Shown here: piece by piece, positions 13,960 through 29,943 of the stretch
Layout of the letters: each line of letters begins with the position of its first letter
Numbering within the stretch: position 1 is the stretch's first letter
IMG/VR virus record: IMGVR_UViG_3300027770_000025
Coordinates: 62,001 to 126,000 of that record
Reading direction: 5' to 3' (one strand)
Length of the DNA: 64,000 nucleotides
Notes under the pieces: model-generated
The model's input: only the letters and a program-made list of their open reading frames with translations
What the model was told of the DNA's origin: nothing
Databases searched by the model: none
Position numbers and translations under genes: made by a program

Positions 13960-14575
13960 AAGAAAGTGTTTAATTGGTTATCTAAATATAAGACATCTGA
14001 TTGGGATAAAAAAATAAATTTTAATAAAATTATAAATAAACTTTTCTGGAGTAATACAGGTTAAGAATCTAAAACCTGTTAACAGTCGCTGTACCGCTGT
14101 CAACGTTCCTTAGACTTTTTCCAGATGCTTCCAGATGCTTCCAGATTGTTCCAGGATAATAATCCGGATACATGCGCTGGAACGTTGACAGCGGTTTAAA
14201 TACGGAAAAGAATCTGAAAACAGTAGGTGGTTTCCCAGAGAATTCCTGGATTTTTCCAAGCATCTATGGATTTATGGAGTGGGAACGTTGACGACGGATA
14301 TAGACATGGTACAAATTCAAAAAACCCCTGAGGATTTTCCCTGTTTTTCCGCGGATACACAGGCTATAGATTGTGGTCGACGTTCCCGCTCATTTCTATC
14401 AGGATCTTTCGTGGTTTAATATAGGATGTTCATGTGGTTTAACGTATGGGTTTCTGATGTATCCATGAAATATCCAGATGTTTTCAGATGTATCCAGGGT
14501 GTATTCAGATGTTTTCAGTCGCGGGAACGTTGACGACGGTTTAAGCAACAGACAGCAACAGACAGCAACAGTAGT

Positions 14576-14885: not shown

Positions 14886-15100
14886 ATATGTATTTATCAG
14901 ATTTATTAAAACTCCTAAAACCCTCCGCGTGCGGGAGTATGTTAGCACCATACTATGTGCAGGAAGTTATGCATTTTTCCACGCATCTTCGGGACGGGAA
15001 CGTTGACAACGGTCTTCGGATTCGTACTAGATAAAAACTCGGGACAACAAAAAAGCAGACCGAAGTCTGCTTTTTATTAAATTACTTTAAAATAATGTTA

Positions 15101-15427
15101 CTAAGAATATTCATCACACTCCCTTAAAAATTCAATATCCATTTCATCAATATCACCTATTGATATTTCATCATATTCTCTGTTTATAAATTTCTTTCCC
15201 TCTATTAAACACTCTGTTATAATCTCCACATTTAAAATAGCTCCTATTAAACTCTCAAACCCCATTCCTGAATCTAGACTTCCGTCTGATAAAGCCTTCT
15301 CTGCCAACTCTCTAATATCGGGCATAGAGTCGCCAGTAATCTTAATGGTTGGGTAAGCTCCTCTTCCGCCTCCCCATAAATTTCCTAGTAAAAATCCTTC
15401 GGCGTGATAACTAATTTTCTTTTCCAT
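15101..15427 (-). CDS. Early hypothetical protein
   Basis: ORF with own promoter and GCAGAC/GTCTGC terminator. Confidence 0.75.
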   Translation of the reverse strand: MEKKISYHAEGFLLGNLWGGGRGAYPTIKITGDSMPDIRELAEKALSDGSLDSGMGFESLIGAILNVEIITECLIEGKKFINREYDEISIGDIDEMDIEFLRECDEYS

Positions 15428-15760
15428 GTTTGTTTAGCTTTAGTTGGTTATGATGCAAATATAAGAAACTAGATAGAGATAAAAAAATAAAATGTGAAAA
15501 TAATTTAATTCTTAATGACCACACAAACAGATGTTGGAGATCGGGGAACGTTGACAACGGTTTTACCCCAACTCTATCTGGAAACTCCCTTCTTCTTTTT
15601 TCTCCAGATAATCCTCTTTTTCCCAGAGTGTTTTCCACCCGGTCTAGGAGCGGGAACGTTGACAACGGTTTTACCCTGAGATGTGGATTACTTTAGTAAA
15701 AATTTGTCCACAAAAAAAGCAGACCGAAGTCTGCTTTCTTATTGACTATGAATCAACAGC

Positions 15761-18055: not shown

Positions 18056-18244
18056 CTACCCTCGTCGTTTGATTATTAGTTTTACCTCAGCAACTAATTC
18101 TTTTGATTCTGTCTTAACCGTTAACGGATTCGCTCCGGGACGATGTGTCTTAAAGAATTTAACAATTGCGGGTACGTTTAGCATACCGCCATTAATTAAT
18201 TCTATAATTTCTGCTCTAATTTCTGTGGTTGTCATTGCGTTCAT
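18056..18244 (-). CDS. Early hypothetical protein (start revised)
   Basis: Own promoter at ~18263. Confidence 0.6.
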   Translation of the reverse strand: MNAMTTTEIRAEIIELINGGMLNVPAIVKFFKTHRPGANPLTVKTESKELVAEVKLIIKRRG

Positions 18245-18349
18245 ATTTGTCTTATTAATACTCAAATATAAGATAATAAATCGGAGTAAAAAAATAAATA
18301 CAGATTATTACTGCATGGTGTTTTCTGATGTAGCAGATAGTTCGAAACG

Positions 18350-18777
18350 TTGTCAACGTTCCTGCGCCGCAACCTTGTTTGTCTTATGGGAATTGATATA
18401 TAGATTAATAAAAAATAAAAAAACTAATGAAAAATTTTAATTCTTTCGAAGATTTCAGTAACCAAAAAATAAACGAGGCAGCGGGCGTAGCTCCTTTTTA
18501 TGATAGCGTAAGCCAAATGAATGCTATATTAGCAAGTGATGATATTGCGGGTAAAATGGAAATGATGTTCATTGACAGTATGACCTATGCAGAGGATCTC
18601 ACATGGATTCTTAAAAGTAAAGATCGTCCCAGATTTATTTTAAAGGTAACTTTAATAGCTGAGGGCGGAGGATATGGTGCTAAAAAATATACTGTAGGTA
18701 AAGTAGTAAAAACTATTGCAACACCTTAATTGTATTGTCAACGTTCCTGCGCCGCAACCTTGTTTGTCTTATGGGAA
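18350..18777. mobile_element. Gene cassette bounded by a perfect 43-bp direct repeat
   Basis: ttgtcaacgttcctgcgccgcaaccttgtttgtcttatgggaa at 18350-18392 and 18735-18777. Confidence 0.6.
18427..18729 (+). CDS. CTS-like-tagged late protein inserted in the early region
   Basis: MKNFNSFEDF..INE; GATATATA at 18395; opposite strand to neighbours. Confidence 0.75.
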   Translation: MKNFNSFEDFSNQKINEAAGVAPFYDSVSQMNAILASDDIAGKMEMMFIDSMTYAEDLTWILKSKDRPRFILKVTLIAEGGGYGAKKYTVGKVVKTIATP

Positions 18778-18856
18778 ACCTTGGAGCACAAAAAAAGAGA
18801 CCGAAGTCCCTTTCTCTGTGGGTAACCAAACCCATATCAAACACACATGATAATTT

Positions 18857-19054
18857 TTAATCCTCTATTTCGAATTGGTCTTCTTCGGGAATAACGGAAA
18901 GGGTTCTTCCACTATCCCATTTAACAATGATCTGACCTATTCCGTCTACTTTAACTACTGTACCCATAGCTCCCGGTTCGATTGGTTCAATATCATCCAT
19001 AAGAATCATTTTAATTCTTTTTCCTTCGATGTTTTTGCTGGTCAGGTGTTTCAT
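18857..19054 (-). CDS. DUF4314-like protein
   Basis: MDD..PIEPGAMGTVVKVDGIGQIIVKWDSGRTLSVIPEED. Confidence 0.75.
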   Translation of the reverse strand: MKHLTSKNIEGKRIKMILMDDIEPIEPGAMGTVVKVDGIGQIIVKWDSGRTLSVIPEEDQFEIED

Positions 19055-19517: not shown

Positions 19518-19752
19518 AGTGTTTTAGTTTTAATTGGTTATGGAGTAAAAGTAAGGTATCAGGTCGGGATAAAAAAATAAAAACTGAAAAAATACTCCGC
19601 CGGAGAAAGTAATAAAAACAGATGCTTCTGCTGGAGAAAACAGTATGCAGCCGCGGGAACGTTGACAGCGTTCTTCGGATTCGCAGCTGTGGAAAACCTA
19701 CGGCAACAAAAAAGGCAGACCTAAGCCTGCCTTTCAAAAGATTTTAAATCTT

Positions 19753-20061
19753 TTATTCGTCTAATTCGTTTAGTGCTCCTGCAATTTCATTTACAGCCAG
19801 ATCTGTAGAAAGTGATGAATGTCCGCCAATGTGCCATTCTATTAGTTCATTCTCATCCAATACCCTGTATTCCTTCCAATCATAAACTGTAAATACCTCA
19901 CCCTTCTCAGTCTCCATGACCCATTCGAAGTTTACCTTGTCCTTGCCATCATTCGTTTCAGAAACTGGAAGACCTAATATTTTTCGAAGGTCTGATACTG
20001 ATGCATTGAATACATCCCCATGGAAGCTTGTCCCACTTGGTGACTTTGATGGTTTTTTCAT
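19753..20061 (-). CDS. Early conserved phage protein (start revised)
   Basis: DKVNFEW...FTVYDWKEY...WHIGG. Confidence 0.75.
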   Translation of the reverse strand: MKKPSKSPSGTSFHGDVFNASVSDLRKILGLPVSETNDGKDKVNFEWVMETEKGEVFTVYDWKEYRVLDENELIEWHIGGHSSLSTDLAVNEIAGALNELDE

Positions 20062-20315
20062 AATTGTATAAGTTAGTTGGTTATGATGCAAATATAAGAT
20101 TCCTGGTTGGGATAAAAAAATAAAATGCTAAAATAGTTTTATTTTTCTTTAAGATGTTGAAGCTGTAGATAAAGATGTTACCCACATATAAAAAGATGTA
20201 GAAGTCGCGGGAACGTTGACAGCGTTCTTTGGATTCGCAGCTGTCGAAAACCTATGGCAACAAAAAAGGCCAAACCTAAGTTTGACCTCTTTAACCAATC
20301 AACCAACTTAACCAA

Positions 20316-20615: not shown

Positions 20616-20831
20616 GATTGTTTGTTTTAGTTGGTTATAAAGCAAATATAAGATATAGGTTCGGGGTAAAAAAATAAAATACTAAATACCCTTCGCGGGC
20701 GTGAGTATCTTAGCACCATACTATGTGCAGGAGGTTACGGATTTTTCCACGCATCTTCGGGGCGGGAACGTTGACAGCGTTCTTCGGATGCTGCTTGGAT
20801 TAAAAATTAGATGTGGTGAGAAAAATAAATA

Positions 20832-21458
20832 TTATAAATTATTAATGATATCAATAAATATCTTTTTGGTCTCTTCTTTACCTATCTTTTCTTCTATGGA
20901 TTTGATAAAATTTATTACAATAGTCTGTTTGTAAATTTCCTGTTCGTAATCCTCCCATCTCTTAGCCTTTCCATCAGGTTTAGTATCCATAAACACCGTA
21001 GGTGCTTTTCCTGTGCATTTAGTTACAAGAGTCTCAACTTCTTTAATAATCCTGTCTACTTCAGTTTTATTTGTAATCACTATCTTTATATTAGGTAACT
21101 CTGATTGAAATTTATCATAGTCAAAATTTTTAGGAACTCTTACAGATACATGAGTAACACCGCCGCCTCTTCCGGTAAAATCTTTAGAGCCAATTCTAAT
21201 TCTAAGAACATTTTCTGAATCAATAGAAGATAAGTTCTTATTATCCTTTTCTCTATCGTATCTAAAATTATAAAAATCACTAGGATTAGTTATTATAAGT
21301 TTATCAAACGAACTTTCATTATCAGATGATATACTTGGATCGTCTTCTTTTACTTTAACATACCCATCAATAGTTGAATTAACATTAAATTTTAATTCAC
21401 TATATGGTAATTGGTCTTCGTTAATTTTTTCGTAGATAAAATCTTTAAATGTTTTCAT
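20832..21458 (-). CDS. CTS-like-tagged late protein inserted in the early region
   Basis: MKTFKDFIYE (very close to T4 IPIII MKTYQEFIAE); GATATATA upstream; flanked by 49-bp direct repeats. Confidence 0.75.
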   Translation of the reverse strand: MKTFKDFIYEKINEDQLPYSELKFNVNSTIDGYVKVKEDDPSISSDNESSFDKLIITNPSDFYNFRYDREKDNKNLSSIDSENVLRIRIGSKDFTGRGGGVTHVSVRVPKNFDYDKFQSELPNIKIVITNKTEVDRIIKEVETLVTKCTGKAPTVFMDTKPDGKAKRWEDYEQEIYKQTIVINFIKSIEEKIGKEETKKIFIDIINNL

Positions 21459-21603
21459 TTCTATTGTTATTTATATATTTATATATCTTTAGTTTGAGCG
21501 GGAACGTTGACAGCGTTCTTCGAATGCTACTTGGATTAAAACTTAGTCCAACAAAAAAGCCTCTTCCGAAGAAGAGGCTCTTGACCAATTAACCAACTAC
21601 CAA

Positions 21604-21891: not shown

Positions 21892-22094
21892 GTGTGATTG
21901 GGTTTAGTTGGTTGTTAAAACATTTTAATTTTTAATTTTTGTCGAACAGATTCAAAATCTGCACCAGTGACTTCATTCTTACAATCAGAGACTAAATCAC
22001 ATAGTTCATTAAAATCTTTAACTCCTGATTGTTTTGCTAACTTTAGTAACTCTTTGAATCCTTCTGTCATAATTATTTGGGTTGGGTTTAGTTA

Positions 22095-22307
22095 TTAAAG
22101 TTTAACAATTTTTGAATCGGTAACCTGAATGCAACAGATGTTAAGACGTTTAATATCTCTTTTTAAATTATCTATAGATAATTTACCTATTACAAAAGAC
22201 TTTGCCCCCTTTTTATTCTCACACTCTACGTGAAAAATCATTGGTGGGTCTAAACCTCCTATCACCCAATCTGGATCTGTAACTACTACACAAAATAGAT
22301 GTTTCAT
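22095..22307 (-). CDS. Early hypothetical protein
   Basis: Own promoter. Confidence 0.6.
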   Translation of the reverse strand: MKHLFCVVVTDPDWVIGGLDPPMIFHVECENKKGAKSFVIGKLSIDNLKRDIKRLNICCIQVTDSKIVKL

Positions 22308-23395: not shown

Positions 23396-23845
23396 TTATT
23401 TTTTCTTTGTTATTTCAATTTCTTTTTTTATAACCATCAAGCCAATAAAATCTTCAAAATTATTTTTAATATTAAGTTCTTTTAATATCTTAGAGGAAAA
23501 TTCTTTTGATTCTCCAACAGAAAAAAATAAAGTTTCATCTGTCTCATGAAAAATTGTAATTGGTATTTCGCATCCAAGTTTTCCTAAGTTTTCTTTCCTG
23601 TGCCATTCCTCCTCCTTAATAATTTCTAATGTTTGGATTTCGTCTGTCATTTCTCCTGTTGGTTTAGGATATTGAAACTTACGCGGGGAAGTTATAAAAT
23701 TTTCAATAAAAGAATATGCACTTTCTTTTTCTAAAGGCTTCTGTGAAATTATTAAAAATTTACGAACAGAGTATTTTTCATAAGGTAGATTCCAATTCGT
23801 GATTGTTTCTAATTTAACTACAGTACCAAAAATCTTGTCTTTCAT
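23396..23845 (-). CDS. Early hypothetical protein
   Basis: Own promoter. Confidence 0.65.
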   Translation of the reverse strand: MKDKIFGTVVKLETITNWNLPYEKYSVRKFLIISQKPLEKESAYSFIENFITSPRKFQYPKPTGEMTDEIQTLEIIKEEEWHRKENLGKLGCEIPITIFHETDETLFFSVGESKEFSSKILKELNIKNNFEDFIGLMVIKKEIEITKKK

Positions 23846-24073
23846 TTTTATAGTGTTTAATTGGTTAATGCAAAGATAAGATATTGAACCGGGATAAAAA
23901 AATATTTCTAAAACTTTTTCTCCATCGGGAATTCTGCTGGAGAAACTGGTATCCGAATCCGGGGAACGTTGACAGCGGTTCTACTCTGTGCATATGGTTT
24001 TGCATTTAAGATTTTATGCCCACAAAAAAACCAGACCTAATCAGATCTGGTTCGCATTCGGAATTGGTAAATG

Positions 24074-26934: not shown

Positions 26935-27026
26935 AGTTGATTGGTTTTATGTTTATGATGTAAATATAATAGATCCAACCGAGGTAAAAAAATATTTCAG
27001 ATATATAGTTCAATATAATTATTAAT

Positions 27027-27899
27027 ATGGATAAGATAAAAAGTTTTAAAGAGTTTACTCTTAACGAAAAAGGAAGTGCATTAGGTTTTCTAGGTGGTAT
27101 TCTAACTGGGAATATTGACATCTTCGATAAACCAGATCAATGGTCCGGTATAGGATCACCAATAACCGGCGATGGGGATCTGCCCAATTCTAACACCGTG
27201 GCATCTGGTCCAAATACCATAGGAGCATTAGCACCAGGTTCTTATACACCATCAGGAACTTATACAGCAACACCAGGTAATGATGACTTTGCTCTTTATA
27301 TGCAGCACCAACAAGGCATAGCAGGAGCAGCGGGTCTAGTTAAAGCACTTAACGGAACTGGTAATATGCATCCAGAAACAGTTAAAACTAAAAGCGGAAC
27401 TAGATACGCAAACCTAGTTAAGAACGTACCTTCTGATAGACCACAAGTTAAGAGAGATATTATAGCATCATTAGACAAAGGAGACCAAAAAACTGCAGCA
27501 GGACTATTCCTTAATATGTGGAAAGAGAAATGGTTTTCTAAGCAAAAGCAGGCTAAGACCGCTATCAACCTTCCCAAAAATGCTACGGTAAAAGATGCTA
27601 TCACTAAAGCATCTTCCAAATACAGTGTGCCCTTTGATTTTGCTATTACTGTTGCTATTATAGAATCAGGTTTAAATCCAGCTGCACACGGAGCAACATA
27701 CAAAGGTCTATATGCAATGAAACCCAGTAGCAACTACAGCGGATTGGTTACTCCTATGGGAAACAATTGGGCAGATCCCTATGTTAATGCAGAAAATGGT
27801 ATTAAGTTATTAAAAAATAACATTGCTCAATTCAAGAAAAGTTTAGGTAACGATTGGGCTTCTCTTAAAGTTGGAAGTTGGGCAAACAACTTAGCTTAA
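27027..27899 (+). CDS. CTS-like-tagged protein with C-terminal lytic transglycosylase (SLT-like) domain
   Basis: MDKIKSFKEFTLNE; ASSKYSVP..AIIESGLNPAA..GLYAM..DPYVNA. Confidence 0.75.
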   Translation: MDKIKSFKEFTLNEKGSALGFLGGILTGNIDIFDKPDQWSGIGSPITGDGDLPNSNTVASGPNTIGALAPGSYTPSGTYTATPGNDDFALYMQHQQGIAGAAGLVKALNGTGNMHPETVKTKSGTRYANLVKNVPSDRPQVKRDIIASLDKGDQKTAAGLFLNMWKEKWFSKQKQAKTAINLPKNATVKDAITKASSKYSVPFDFAITVAIIESGLNPAAHGATYKGLYAMKPSSNYSGLVTPMGNNWADPYVNAENGIKLLKNNIAQFKKSLGNDWASLKVGSWANNLA

Positions 27900-28046
27900 T
27901 TTTCCACGCAACCACAGAGCAGGAACGTTGACAACGGTTTCACCCACTACATCATACTTTTTCCCAATTATTAAACACAACAAAAAACCCAAGTCCTTTC
28001 GAACTTGGGTCCGGAGTCGAATAGTAAACTCCTTTAACCAACCAAC

Positions 28047-29743: not shown

Positions 29744-29943
29744 GATAAAAGGTTTTAATTAAATTTACATGTATTATAGCAGGAAAACGTGAAAAAGTTT
29801 CTGATGCTGTCTTTCGGATGATGCCATCAGACGGAACGGTGTCAACGTTCCCGCGGTCTGTCTATGATTTTGGATTTAGTCAAATCCCACAAAAAACCCC
29901 CGGACTTTTGGACCGAGGGCTAATTGCTTTGTAACCAAACAAA

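What the first reader, a model, noticed from the sequence alone, without database searches (positions are those of the whole stretch)
18350..18777. Perfect 43-bp direct repeat flanks an out-of-place late, tagged gene
The gene 18427..18729 (plus strand, GATATATA promoter, CTS-like tag) is bracketed by identical 43-mers that begin with the reverse complement of the element. The left repeat ends 2 nt before GATATATA and the right begins 5 nt after the stop, so the insert is almost exactly one transcription unit. That precision suggests recent directed capture, either by circle integration or by an RNA-templated route.
Basis: partly seen in the sequence, partly recalled or inferred. Interest (0 to 1): 0.75.

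Follow-up and report, generated by a model that had tools for sequence, protein, structure and literature searches.

The report
Recently inserted phage late-gene cassette
A 342-bp unit (late promoter plus a small gene whose product is probably packed into the phage head) was recently inserted into the early-gene region of a giant T4-like lake phage, duplicating 43 bp of target, and phages with and without it coexist in nature, so it shows one accessory-gene gain caught in the act.

Summary
Identical 43-mers (18350-18392, 18735-18777) bracket a 342-bp insert. The insert is a GATATATA promoter plus a 100-aa ORF with an N-terminal tag like the T4 capsid-targeting sequence. Three independent metagenome contigs (L021, L024, L050) carry one exact 43-mer and lack exactly 385 bp. 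Four more divergent haplogroups are also single-copy. At least 16 independent assemblies carry the filled form, so it is not a misassembly.

The host genome is a 348-kb T4-like phage (gp23, gp21-type protease, UvsX/RecA-like). The site lies in a hyperplastic array of small early genes separated by promoter, palindrome and terminator modules. The gene's closest relative (98.7% nt) sits in an unrelated context in another phage lineage, with its own palindrome and terminator. The window copy was cut out between promoter and stop.

The joints show 0 and 3 nt of microhomology, with no terminal inverted repeats. No RT, integrase, resolvase or Cas1 was found. An RNA route is rejected because the promoter is included and the 3' UTR is excluded. 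Two other tagged late cassettes (Y here, Z in a relative) show the same architecture with 49- and 37-bp duplications.

The closest known analogue is PeSL modular shuffling with mini-circles in T4-type phages. This differs in that site-unique target DNA is duplicated.

The parts
18056..18244 (-). Early gene (62 aa) downstream of the site, in the early-gene direction
   Evidence: ORF list. Gene calls on the own record and on relatives.
18241..18299 (-). Early promoter module of the 62-aa gene, a member of the dispersed 57-59-nt intergenic repeat family
   Evidence: Repeat families D1-D4. The A-rich promoter box lies 52-85 nt from the element in typical modules.
18346..18360 (.). Complete palindromic element AACGTT-GTC-AACGTT. 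It is inverted here relative to 16 of the 20 copies, and also in the empty alleles.
   Evidence: It folds as a 6-bp stem with a 3-nt loop.
18350..18392 (+). Direct repeat copy 1. It starts 4 nt inside the palindrome and ends 2 nt before the promoter motif.
   Evidence: One natural variant has a SNP at 18388 (L044).
18393..18734 (+). The 342-bp insert, absent (together with one 43-mer) from the empty alleles
   Evidence: Alignment of filled and empty alleles. Homology to X loci of other lineages starts at 18393/18394. It is 99.4-100% identical among 16 filled alleles. No terminal inverted repeats.
18395..18402 (+). GATATATA late-promoter-like motif
   Evidence: Genome-wide census. The motif also precedes the ORF holding the gp21-like protease.
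18427..18729 (+). Gene X (100 aa). Residues 1-17 form a CTS-like propeptide ending in I-N-E. Residues 24-97 form a compact alpha+beta domain of unknown function.
   Evidence: 32 homologues at 63-99% identity with an invariant tag. The AF2 model has pLDDT 72.5 with residues 1-23 disordered. No Pfam, PHROG, fold or Atlas match.
18735..18777 (+). Direct repeat copy 2. Its palindrome lacks the left arm. The joint TTGTATTG|TCAACG has 3 nt (TTG) of microhomology with the native 3' flank.
18787..18820 (-). Terminator hairpin plus T-run of the upstream early gene. It pairs less well on the + strand.
   Evidence: Fold of the minus strand, with a 15-bp stem and TTCG loop.
18857..19054 (-). Early gene (65 aa, DUF4314) upstream of the site
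   Evidence: Pfam 6.3e-19. The exact protein occurs in 151 collection blocks.
20762..20810 (+). Second case, gene Y: direct repeat copy A (49 bp, 46/49 identical to copy B), beginning with the element
   Evidence: Empty allele L020 has a single copy.
20832..21458 (-). Gene Y (208 aa), a late, tagged gene (MKTFKDFIYE...). Its GATATATA motif is at 21480-21487.
   Evidence: It is 94.6% nt identical to L029, whose flanks are otherwise unalignable.
21498..21546 (+). Gene Y: direct repeat copy B

Best explanation
Shown. The locus is a presence/absence polymorphism in a natural population of a 348-kb T4-like freshwater phage. A 342-bp cassette (late promoter GATATATA plus gene X) lies in the spacer between the palindromic element and the terminator of one intergenic module of the hyperplastic early-gene array. 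Exactly 43 bp of that spacer, including most of the palindrome, is present on both sides of it. Single copy is the ancestral state. The cassette is foreign to this site. Its relatives in other phage lineages are full units of promoter, X, palindrome and terminator, with different neighbours.

Inferred, origin. This was a DNA-level illegitimate insertion. It had two independent joints, one blunt and one with 3 nt of microhomology. They landed 43 bp apart on the target, at or next to two hairpin-forming sequences (palindrome and terminator). Filling in or re-copying the interval duplicated it. Possible routes are a staggered double break with fragment capture, or two template switches during recombination-dependent replication.

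Inferred, afterwards. The 43-bp repeats let the phage's own homologous recombination pop the unit out as a 385-bp circle and put it back into empty 43-mers. This is how the PeSL mini-circles of T4-type phages behave, and it explains why the cassette sits on several flank haplotypes.

Inferred, function. X is made late. Its N-terminal tag directs it into the prohead, the gp21-like protease removes the tag after I-N-E(17), and the roughly 83-aa product is delivered with the DNA. It would be an accessory, possibly anti-defence, internal protein.
For: Empty alleles with one exact 43-mer and a 385-bp gap: L021, L024 and L050.

Divergent single-copy alleles: L015, L016/L019 and L020.

Filled allele in at least 16 assemblies. 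One of them has a SNP in copy 1.

The 43-mer occurs nowhere else in the genome, and the insert has no paralogue.

X occurs in five or more other contexts. Native unit and joints. CDS 98.7% identical to L038.

No TIRs. No RT, tyrosine or serine recombinase, Cas1, GIY-YIG or HNH.

T4-like head genes and a RecA/UvsX-like gene.

The same architecture holds for Y and Z, with repeats that are progressively more diverged.

The insert is 99.8% identical among filled alleles, while the flanks are 90-97%. All four gametes exist for a SNP 12 nt from repeat 1.

The tag is enriched on GATATATA genes (20/53 vs 12/308, p=4e-11). The T4 CTS is MKTYQEFIAE (PMC8442874). An SLT-domain protein carries the tag.

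PeSL mini-circles of 400-1400 bp have been demonstrated (PMC2839356).
Against: Random illegitimate joints do not predict cassette ends that sit 0-2 nt before the promoter and 4-5 nt after the stop in both X and Z. They also do not predict three duplications of similar size (37-49 bp), all containing the element in the same orientation relative to the gene. This may instead reflect selection, or an unrecognised specific mechanism.

No sampled donor combines the window's leader type with its CDS type.

Polarity rests on parsimony.

No read-level evidence for circles is available. Only k=31 unitigs could be laid, and these break in the 43-mer whichever allele is present.

Head packaging and cleavage of X are untested.
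Confidence: 0.6

Rival explanations
1. Pure PeSL-type event. X arrived as a mini-circle already carrying the 43-mer and integrated by homologous recombination into the resident 43-mer. There was no illegitimate step at this site.
For: The structure of two copies when filled and one when empty is exactly what circle integration or excision gives (PMC2839356). The four-gamete pattern and the invariant cassette on varied flanks fit repeated integration or excision. A RecA/UvsX-like gene is present.
Against: 30 of the 43 bases are unique to this site. No other X context carries them. A circle with that sequence can therefore only come from an already filled allele, and the first event is left unexplained.
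Confidence: 0.2
2. A dedicated capture system. An unrecognised nuclease or recombinase acts at the palindromic element, makes cuts staggered by about 40-50 bp, and inserts minimal promoter-ORF units in a fixed orientation.
For: Three different tagged late genes (X, Y, Z) are flanked by 43-, 49- and 37-bp duplications containing the element. All three have the element in the same orientation relative to the gene, and two have ends within 0-5 nt of the promoter and the stop. The element is confined to this 23-kb block, with fixed spacing to terminators.
Against: Duplication length and cut positions relative to the palindrome differ among the three cases. In Y the element lies at the other end of the repeat. 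No integrase, resolvase, Cas1, GIY-YIG or HNH was found. X itself has no nuclease-like fold. A third late cassette in the block (27027-27899) has no flanking repeat.
Confidence: 0.12
3. The filled form is ancestral. X was always flanked by two native modules that gene conversion made identical, and all single-copy alleles are deletions.
For: Every gene in the array is flanked by similar modules, for example the 68-bp, 94% repeat around 19753-20091. Deletion between 43-bp repeats is easy.
Against: Four divergent haplogroups all lack X. Copy 2 lacks the left arm of the palindrome, unlike any native module. X is 98.7% identical to a copy in an unrelated context, while the local flanks differ by 6-15% between haplogroups.
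Confidence: 0.05
4. RNA-templated (retro) insertion of the X transcript.
For: The insert is about one expression unit. Its right end lies 5 nt after the stop.
Against: The insert begins upstream of the promoter motif, which a transcript would not contain. It lacks the native 3' UTR, palindrome and terminator. It has no A-tail. There is no RT in the genome.
Confidence: 0.02
5. Assembly artefact.
For: Short-read assemblers can mis-join at repeats.
Against: The identical structure appears in at least 16 assemblies from different samples and pipelines, on contigs up to 348 kb that span both joints. The empty form was also assembled independently three times.
Confidence: 0.01

Closest known systems
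PeSL (promoter-early stem-loop) modular shuffling and mini-circles in T4-type phages (Arbiol et al. 2010, PMC2839356; Comeau et al. 2014, PMC4122927)
   Same: A T4-like phage. A hyperplastic region of small ORFans, each with its own promoter and terminator module. Gene-sized indels between close relatives bounded by those modules. The flanking repeats allow excision as a circle of about 400 bp. No dedicated recombinase.
   Different: The repeat here is not two dispersed modules recombined into a chimera. It is a duplication that includes 30 bp unique to the site. The modules carry an extra palindrome. The mobile genes have late promoters and head-targeting tags rather than early promoters. X lies antisense to the array. 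Circles have not been demonstrated here.
T-even internal protein (IP) genes with the capsid targeting sequence (Mullaney and Black 1996, as reviewed in PMC9026906 and PMC3012670)
   Same: A short conserved N-terminal tag (T4: MKTYQEFIAE; Y: MKTFKDFIYE; X: MKNFNSFEDF...KINE) on otherwise unrelated, highly variable small late proteins. A gp21-type protease gene is present. An I/L-x-E site follows the tag. Gene content varies between close relatives.
   Different: Here roughly 30-50 genes carry the tag, far more than the three IPs of T4. Packaging, cleavage and any anti-defence role are untested. X has no sequence or fold similarity to IPI*.
Integron gene cassettes
   Same: Small single-gene units next to an imperfect palindromic site. 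Arrays with variable content. Circular intermediates are plausible.
   Different: No tyrosine integrase. The cassettes carry their own promoter. The target sequence is duplicated, which attI x attC recombination does not do.
Elements that duplicate their target (transposons, casposons, CRISPR spacer integration)
   Same: An insert flanked by a perfect direct repeat of target DNA.
   Different: No transposase or Cas1, and no terminal inverted repeats. The duplication is long and of variable length (37, 43, 49 bp).

Membership tests
PeSL-type mobile regulatory cassette system | T4-type phage with hyperplastic regions of small non-conserved ORFs | tested here: met
   Gp23 at 138 bits, Peptidase_S77 at 32.9 bits, RecA-like at 53 bits. 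The array of 50-200-aa minus-strand ORFs has many gene-sized indels among relatives.
PeSL-type mobile regulatory cassette system | Composite terminator stem-loop plus early promoter motif repeated between the ORFs | tested here: met
   Repeat families D1-D5. Terminator hairpin. Regular spacing of promoter box, element and terminator. An extra palindrome is present that PeSLs do not have.
PeSL-type mobile regulatory cassette system | Indel junction is a chimera of two pre-existing dispersed motifs (homologous exchange) | tested here: not met
   For X, both copies equal the single copy of the empty allele, and 30 of the 43 bases occur nowhere else. The joints have 0 and 3 nt of homology.
PeSL-type mobile regulatory cassette system | Excised mini-circles detectable | not testable with these tools
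   Only k=31 unitigs were available, and these break inside the 43-mer.
T4-type CTS-tagged internal (ejected) proteins | N-terminal tag of about 10 residues resembling MKTYQEFIAE, followed by a gp21 site (L/I-x-E) | tested here: met
   X begins MKNFNSFEDF, with aromatic residues at positions 4 and 7 and I-N-E at 15-17, invariant in 27 homologues. Y matches 6 of 10 positions, including I-x-E. T4 sequence from PMC8442874.
T4-type CTS-tagged internal (ejected) proteins | gp21-family prohead protease encoded by the phage | tested here: met
   PF03420 at 32.9 bits against a cut-off of 27.
T4-type CTS-tagged internal (ejected) proteins | Protein present, and cleaved, in the mature head | not testable with these tools
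   No isolate and no proteome.
Integron cassette | Tyrosine integrase (IntI) and attI/attC recombination without target duplication | tested here: not met
   No PF00589 match. A target duplication is present.
Transposon / casposon / CRISPR-type integration | Transposase or Cas1, terminal inverted repeats, fixed-length target duplication | tested here: not met
   No Cas1. Best TIR-like match is 5 nt. Duplications of 37, 43 and 49 bp.
Retro-insertion (RNA-templated) | Insert co-linear with a transcript; reverse transcriptase available | tested here: not met
   The insert includes the promoter motif and lacks the native 3' UTR. No PF00078 match. Transcript ends were not mapped.

The most novel reading that the evidence does not exclude
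T4-like jumbo phages of this freshwater group have a specific, so far unrecognised way of capturing minimal 'late promoter plus head-targeted ORF' units beside a palindromic intergenic element. It generates duplications of about 37-49 bp of the spacer bounded by the element and the terminator, and so builds an exchangeable arsenal of injected proteins. In function this would be an integron-like system, but with no known integrase.
Probability: 0.2. Interest if true: 0.85.

Novelty: new variant of a known kind. Interest (0 to 1): 0.6.

Why it matters
How large lytic phages acquire and exchange accessory genes is mostly inferred from old, blurred events. This locus offers an unblurred one. Donor-like contexts, filled alleles and exact empty alleles are all sampled from nature, and both joints are readable to the base. 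Two older events (Y, Z) have the same architecture.

The locus links two established T4 themes. One is module-mediated shuffling of hyperplastic regions. The other is polymorphic head-targeted internal proteins. It links them in a distant, uncultured, 348-kb relative. It also points to a very large repertoire of tagged late proteins, roughly 30-50, as the cargo being exchanged.

If the recurrent geometry reflects a mechanism rather than selection, that mechanism would be a new route of gene capture. If the tag works as it does in T4, these cassettes are candidates for injected anti-defence factors.

Tried and rejected
- **IMG/VR scans.** Scans for the 43-mer, for X and for the element found no relatives, because the own record is masked there. 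Relatives came instead from the exact-protein index.
- **Reads.** Only Logan unitigs (k=31) exist for the holding runs. They break inside the 43-mer, so they neither bridge the joints nor reveal circles. One low-depth contig in run X1 that joins 18331 to 18735 through 19 other letters looks like a divergent empty allele, but only 27 nt lie on its shorter side. The RNA run X15 holds contigs over X but carries no strand or end information.
- **Function of X.** There was no match in Pfam, PHROG, Foldseek PDB/BFVD (best E 0.04-0.1, TM below 0.45) or the ESM Atlas. A nuclease or recombinase role for X is unsupported.
- **Simple consensus scans.** The sigma-70 promoter and terminator scan was uninformative here.
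- **Endonuclease VII.** The search was silent in the controls too, so it says nothing either way.
- **Transposon reading.** Rejected: no TIRs and variable duplication length.
- **RNA route.** Rejected: the promoter is inside the insert and there is no RT.
- **Longer homology at the left joint.** The shared C(T/C)TATG lying 4-6 nt upstream does not fit the observed joint.
- **Complex prediction.** Not attempted, because no binding claim is made.

Full report
**1. Observation**

- Positions 18350-18392 and 18735-18777 are identical 43-mers, 385 bp apart.
- Between them lie TT, the motif GATATATA (18395-18402), a 24-nt A-rich leader, a 100-codon ORF (18427-18729) and five bases (TTGTA).
- Bases 2-13 of the 43-mer are the reverse complement of GGAACGTTGACA.
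- Allowing 3 mismatches, the 43-mer occurs only at these two places in the whole genome.
- Neither the insert nor its protein has another copy there.

**2. Setting**

The window is bases 62001-126000 of a 348,582-bp virus record from a freshwater lake metagenome, 36% G+C.

The phage is T4-like. It encodes:
- a gp23-family capsid protein (138 bits);
- a gp21-family prohead protease (32.9 bits, above the cut-off);
- a RecA/UvsX-like protein.

The finding lies in a 23-kb array of small minus-strand genes, each with its own promoter and terminator. The intergenic modules are dispersed repeats (families D1-D5).

These modules contain a near-palindromic element, consensus GGGAACGTTGACA(N)CG(G)TT. 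It has 20 copies against 0.12 expected, all within window 12169-34928. It sits 52-61 nt from the A-run of the neighbouring terminator and 52-85 nt from the next promoter box.

At the X site the element is inverted, and it is inverted in the alleles without X too.

**3. The gene is late and tagged**

GATATATA occurs 77 times, about twice expectation. It nearly always lies 4-40 nt upstream of an ATG, including the ORF that holds the prohead protease.

ORFs behind this motif are strongly enriched for an N-terminal signature M-K-x-(I/L)-K-x-(F/Y)-x-x-(F/Y). It occurs on 20 of 53 such ORFs against 12 of 308 others (p = 4e-11). An (I/L)-x-E usually follows within about 17 residues.

The T4 capsid targeting sequence is MKTYQEFIAE. 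It is removed by gp21, and it is the only conserved feature of the otherwise diverse, polymorphic internal proteins (PMC8442874; PMC9026906; PMC3012670).
- The neighbouring gene Y starts MKTFKDFIYE, a 6 of 10 match that includes I-x-E.
- X starts MKNFNSFEDFSNQKINE.
- One tagged protein in the block (27027-27899) has an SLT transglycosylase domain, as expected for virion-delivered proteins.

The 'CTS-like tag' is therefore a sound reading by sequence, although packaging is untested.

X is a real, conserved family: 32 homologues at 63-99% identity with an invariant tag. The predicted structure has a disordered residue 1-23 segment followed by a small alpha+beta domain. No family or fold match was found.

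**4. The decisive test: empty sites**

Looking up the exact flanking proteins in public assemblies returned many near-identical contigs.
- **Filled.** At least 16 independent assemblies carry the filled form with two 43-mers. One of them (L044) has a single SNP in copy 1.
- **Empty.** Three contigs (L021, L024, L050) carry a single exact 43-mer and lack exactly 385 bp, with colinear flanks.
- **Divergent.** Four more divergent haplogroups (L015, L016/L019, L020) also have one copy, differing at 6 or more positions.

Misassembly is excluded. Single copy is the ancestral state by parsimony.

**5. Where X came from**

In other lineages X is again a lone gene among early genes, but with different neighbours.

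Its native unit is promoter, X, about 20-35 nt, a palindrome (CACCGTTGTCGACGGTG type), and a strong terminator.

The window's CDS is 98.7% identical to that of L038, whose surroundings do not align with this genome at all. By contrast, the local flanks differ by 6-15% between haplogroups.

Homology to all foreign copies begins at 18393/18394 and ends at TTGTATTG. The window copy therefore lost its own palindrome and terminator and uses those of the target.
- The left joint (GGGAA|TTGATATATA) shows no microhomology.
- The right joint shows 3 nt (TTG) and cuts the target palindrome 4 nt into its left arm.
- The insert has no terminal inverted repeats.
- The genome has no detectable reverse transcriptase, tyrosine or serine recombinase, Cas1, GIY-YIG or HNH.

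**6. Mechanism**

An RNA route is rejected. The promoter motif lies inside the insert and the native 3' UTR lies outside it.

A site-specific or homologous exchange cannot have made the first copy. 30 of the 43 duplicated bases are unique to this site and absent from every sampled donor.

The simplest origin is a DNA-level illegitimate insertion whose two joints landed 43 bp apart on the target, duplicating the interval. Both joints lie at or near hairpin-forming sequences (palindrome and terminator). This suggests breaks or replication stalls there, in a phage that replicates by recombination.

Once made, the 43-bp repeats should support excision and re-integration by homologous recombination, as shown experimentally for PeSL mini-circles of 400-1400 bp (PMC2839356). 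The population data fit this:
- The cassette and both repeats are 99.7-100% identical across filled alleles, whereas the adjacent flanks are 90-97% identical.
- For a SNP only 12 nt from repeat 1, all four combinations with presence or absence exist.

**7. Not a one-off**

A genome-wide scan of the 66 GATATATA genes found tight flanking repeats containing the element only for X and for Y. A third hit is an unrelated 40-nt repeat around a 156-aa ORF outside the window. It lies 50 and 181 nt from that gene's ends.
- **Y** (20832-21458, minus strand) sits between 49-bp repeats, 46/49 identical, that start with the element. An exact empty allele is L020.
- **Z**, a third tagged gene (92 aa), sits in relative L020 between 37-bp repeats (33/37). 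These abut its promoter (0 nt) and its stop (4 nt). Empty alleles are L018 and L023.

In all three cases the duplicated piece is the spacer between the element and the neighbouring terminator-like hairpin. In all three the element reads TGTCAACGTTCC in the gene's sense direction.

Lengths and cut positions differ, and in Y the element is at the other end of the repeat. A fixed-stagger enzyme is therefore unlikely.

Even so, the closeness of the cassette ends to promoter and stop in both X and Z is not what random joints predict. This remains unexplained. Selection is a possible reason, for example if an element is needed both downstream of a late gene, as in the native units, and upstream of the next early promoter. 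A specific mechanism is the alternative.

**8. Comparison and verdict**

The system works like PeSL-mediated modular shuffling and like the polymorphic CTS-tagged internal-protein loci of T-even phages. It fails one defining PeSL feature, the chimeric junction of two dispersed motifs. It also fails the defining features of integrons, transposons and retro-insertion.

I rate it a new variant of a known kind. The RNA route is refuted. Circle integration is plausible for the spread of the cassette but not for its origin.

Noticed in passing
whole genome G000; in the window especially 5700-63500: Roughly 30-50 late (GATATATA) genes begin with a T4-CTS-like tag (MKxIKxFExF..., often followed by I/L-x-E). 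That is far more than the three internal proteins of T4. It suggests a very large cargo of head-packaged or ejected proteins.
   Followed up: partly
window 12169-34928: The near-palindromic element GGGAACGTTGACA(N)CGGTT has 20 copies, all confined to this 23-kb early block and regularly spaced (52-61 nt) from terminators. Related phage lineages carry a variant palindrome (CACCGTTGNCGACGGTG) in the same places, including just downstream of late genes. Its function is unknown; it may be a regulator site, an RNA hairpin or a recombination hotspot.
   Followed up: partly
window 20762-21546: Gene Y (208 aa, tag MKTFKDFIYE) is a second late cassette flanked by a 49-bp direct repeat (46/49 identical). 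It is absent from L016, L019, L020, L021 and L024. It is 94.6% nt identical to a copy in L029, whose flanks are unalignable.
   Followed up: yes
L020:2061-2442 (relative); empty in L018 and L023: Gene Z (92 aa, MKNIKHYDSF...) lies between 37-bp repeats (33/37 identical) that start at the element. The repeats abut the promoter (0 nt) and the stop (4 nt).
   Followed up: partly
window 27000-27899: A third late, tagged gene in the early block, on the plus strand, has an SLT transglycosylase domain (28.3 bits). An element follows it at 27922, but it has no flanking direct repeat.
   Followed up: partly
L040:2460-3485: Two adjacent tagged late genes (114 and 101 aa) share the first 50 nt of coding sequence (96%) and the promoter. 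The second, an X homologue with its native terminator, lies between 44-bp repeats (91%) that contain the element. The tag-coding DNA may itself be a recombination substrate.
   Followed up: no
window 15078-15648, 19725-20073, 21914-22304, 23415-23871: These are further gene-sized segments that are present here but absent from several close relatives, with breakpoints in the intergenic modules. For example, a 68-bp, 94% repeat (19649-19716 and 20203-20270) lies around the early gene 19753-20091. This is ordinary PeSL-like indel behaviour.
   Followed up: partly
genome-wide: In about 14 late genes the ATG lies only 4-6 nt after GATATATA. This implies leaderless or nearly leaderless late mRNAs.
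   Followed up: no
window 14098-14190: Two copies of the element lie in opposite orientation, 80 bp apart. A further inverted copy is at 29840. None of these was examined.
   Followed up: no
G000:C1:307827-308640 (outside the window): A promoter-bearing segment of about 40 nt is duplicated 768 bp apart around a 156-aa late ORF. It looks like a local tandem duplication unrelated to the element.
   Followed up: no
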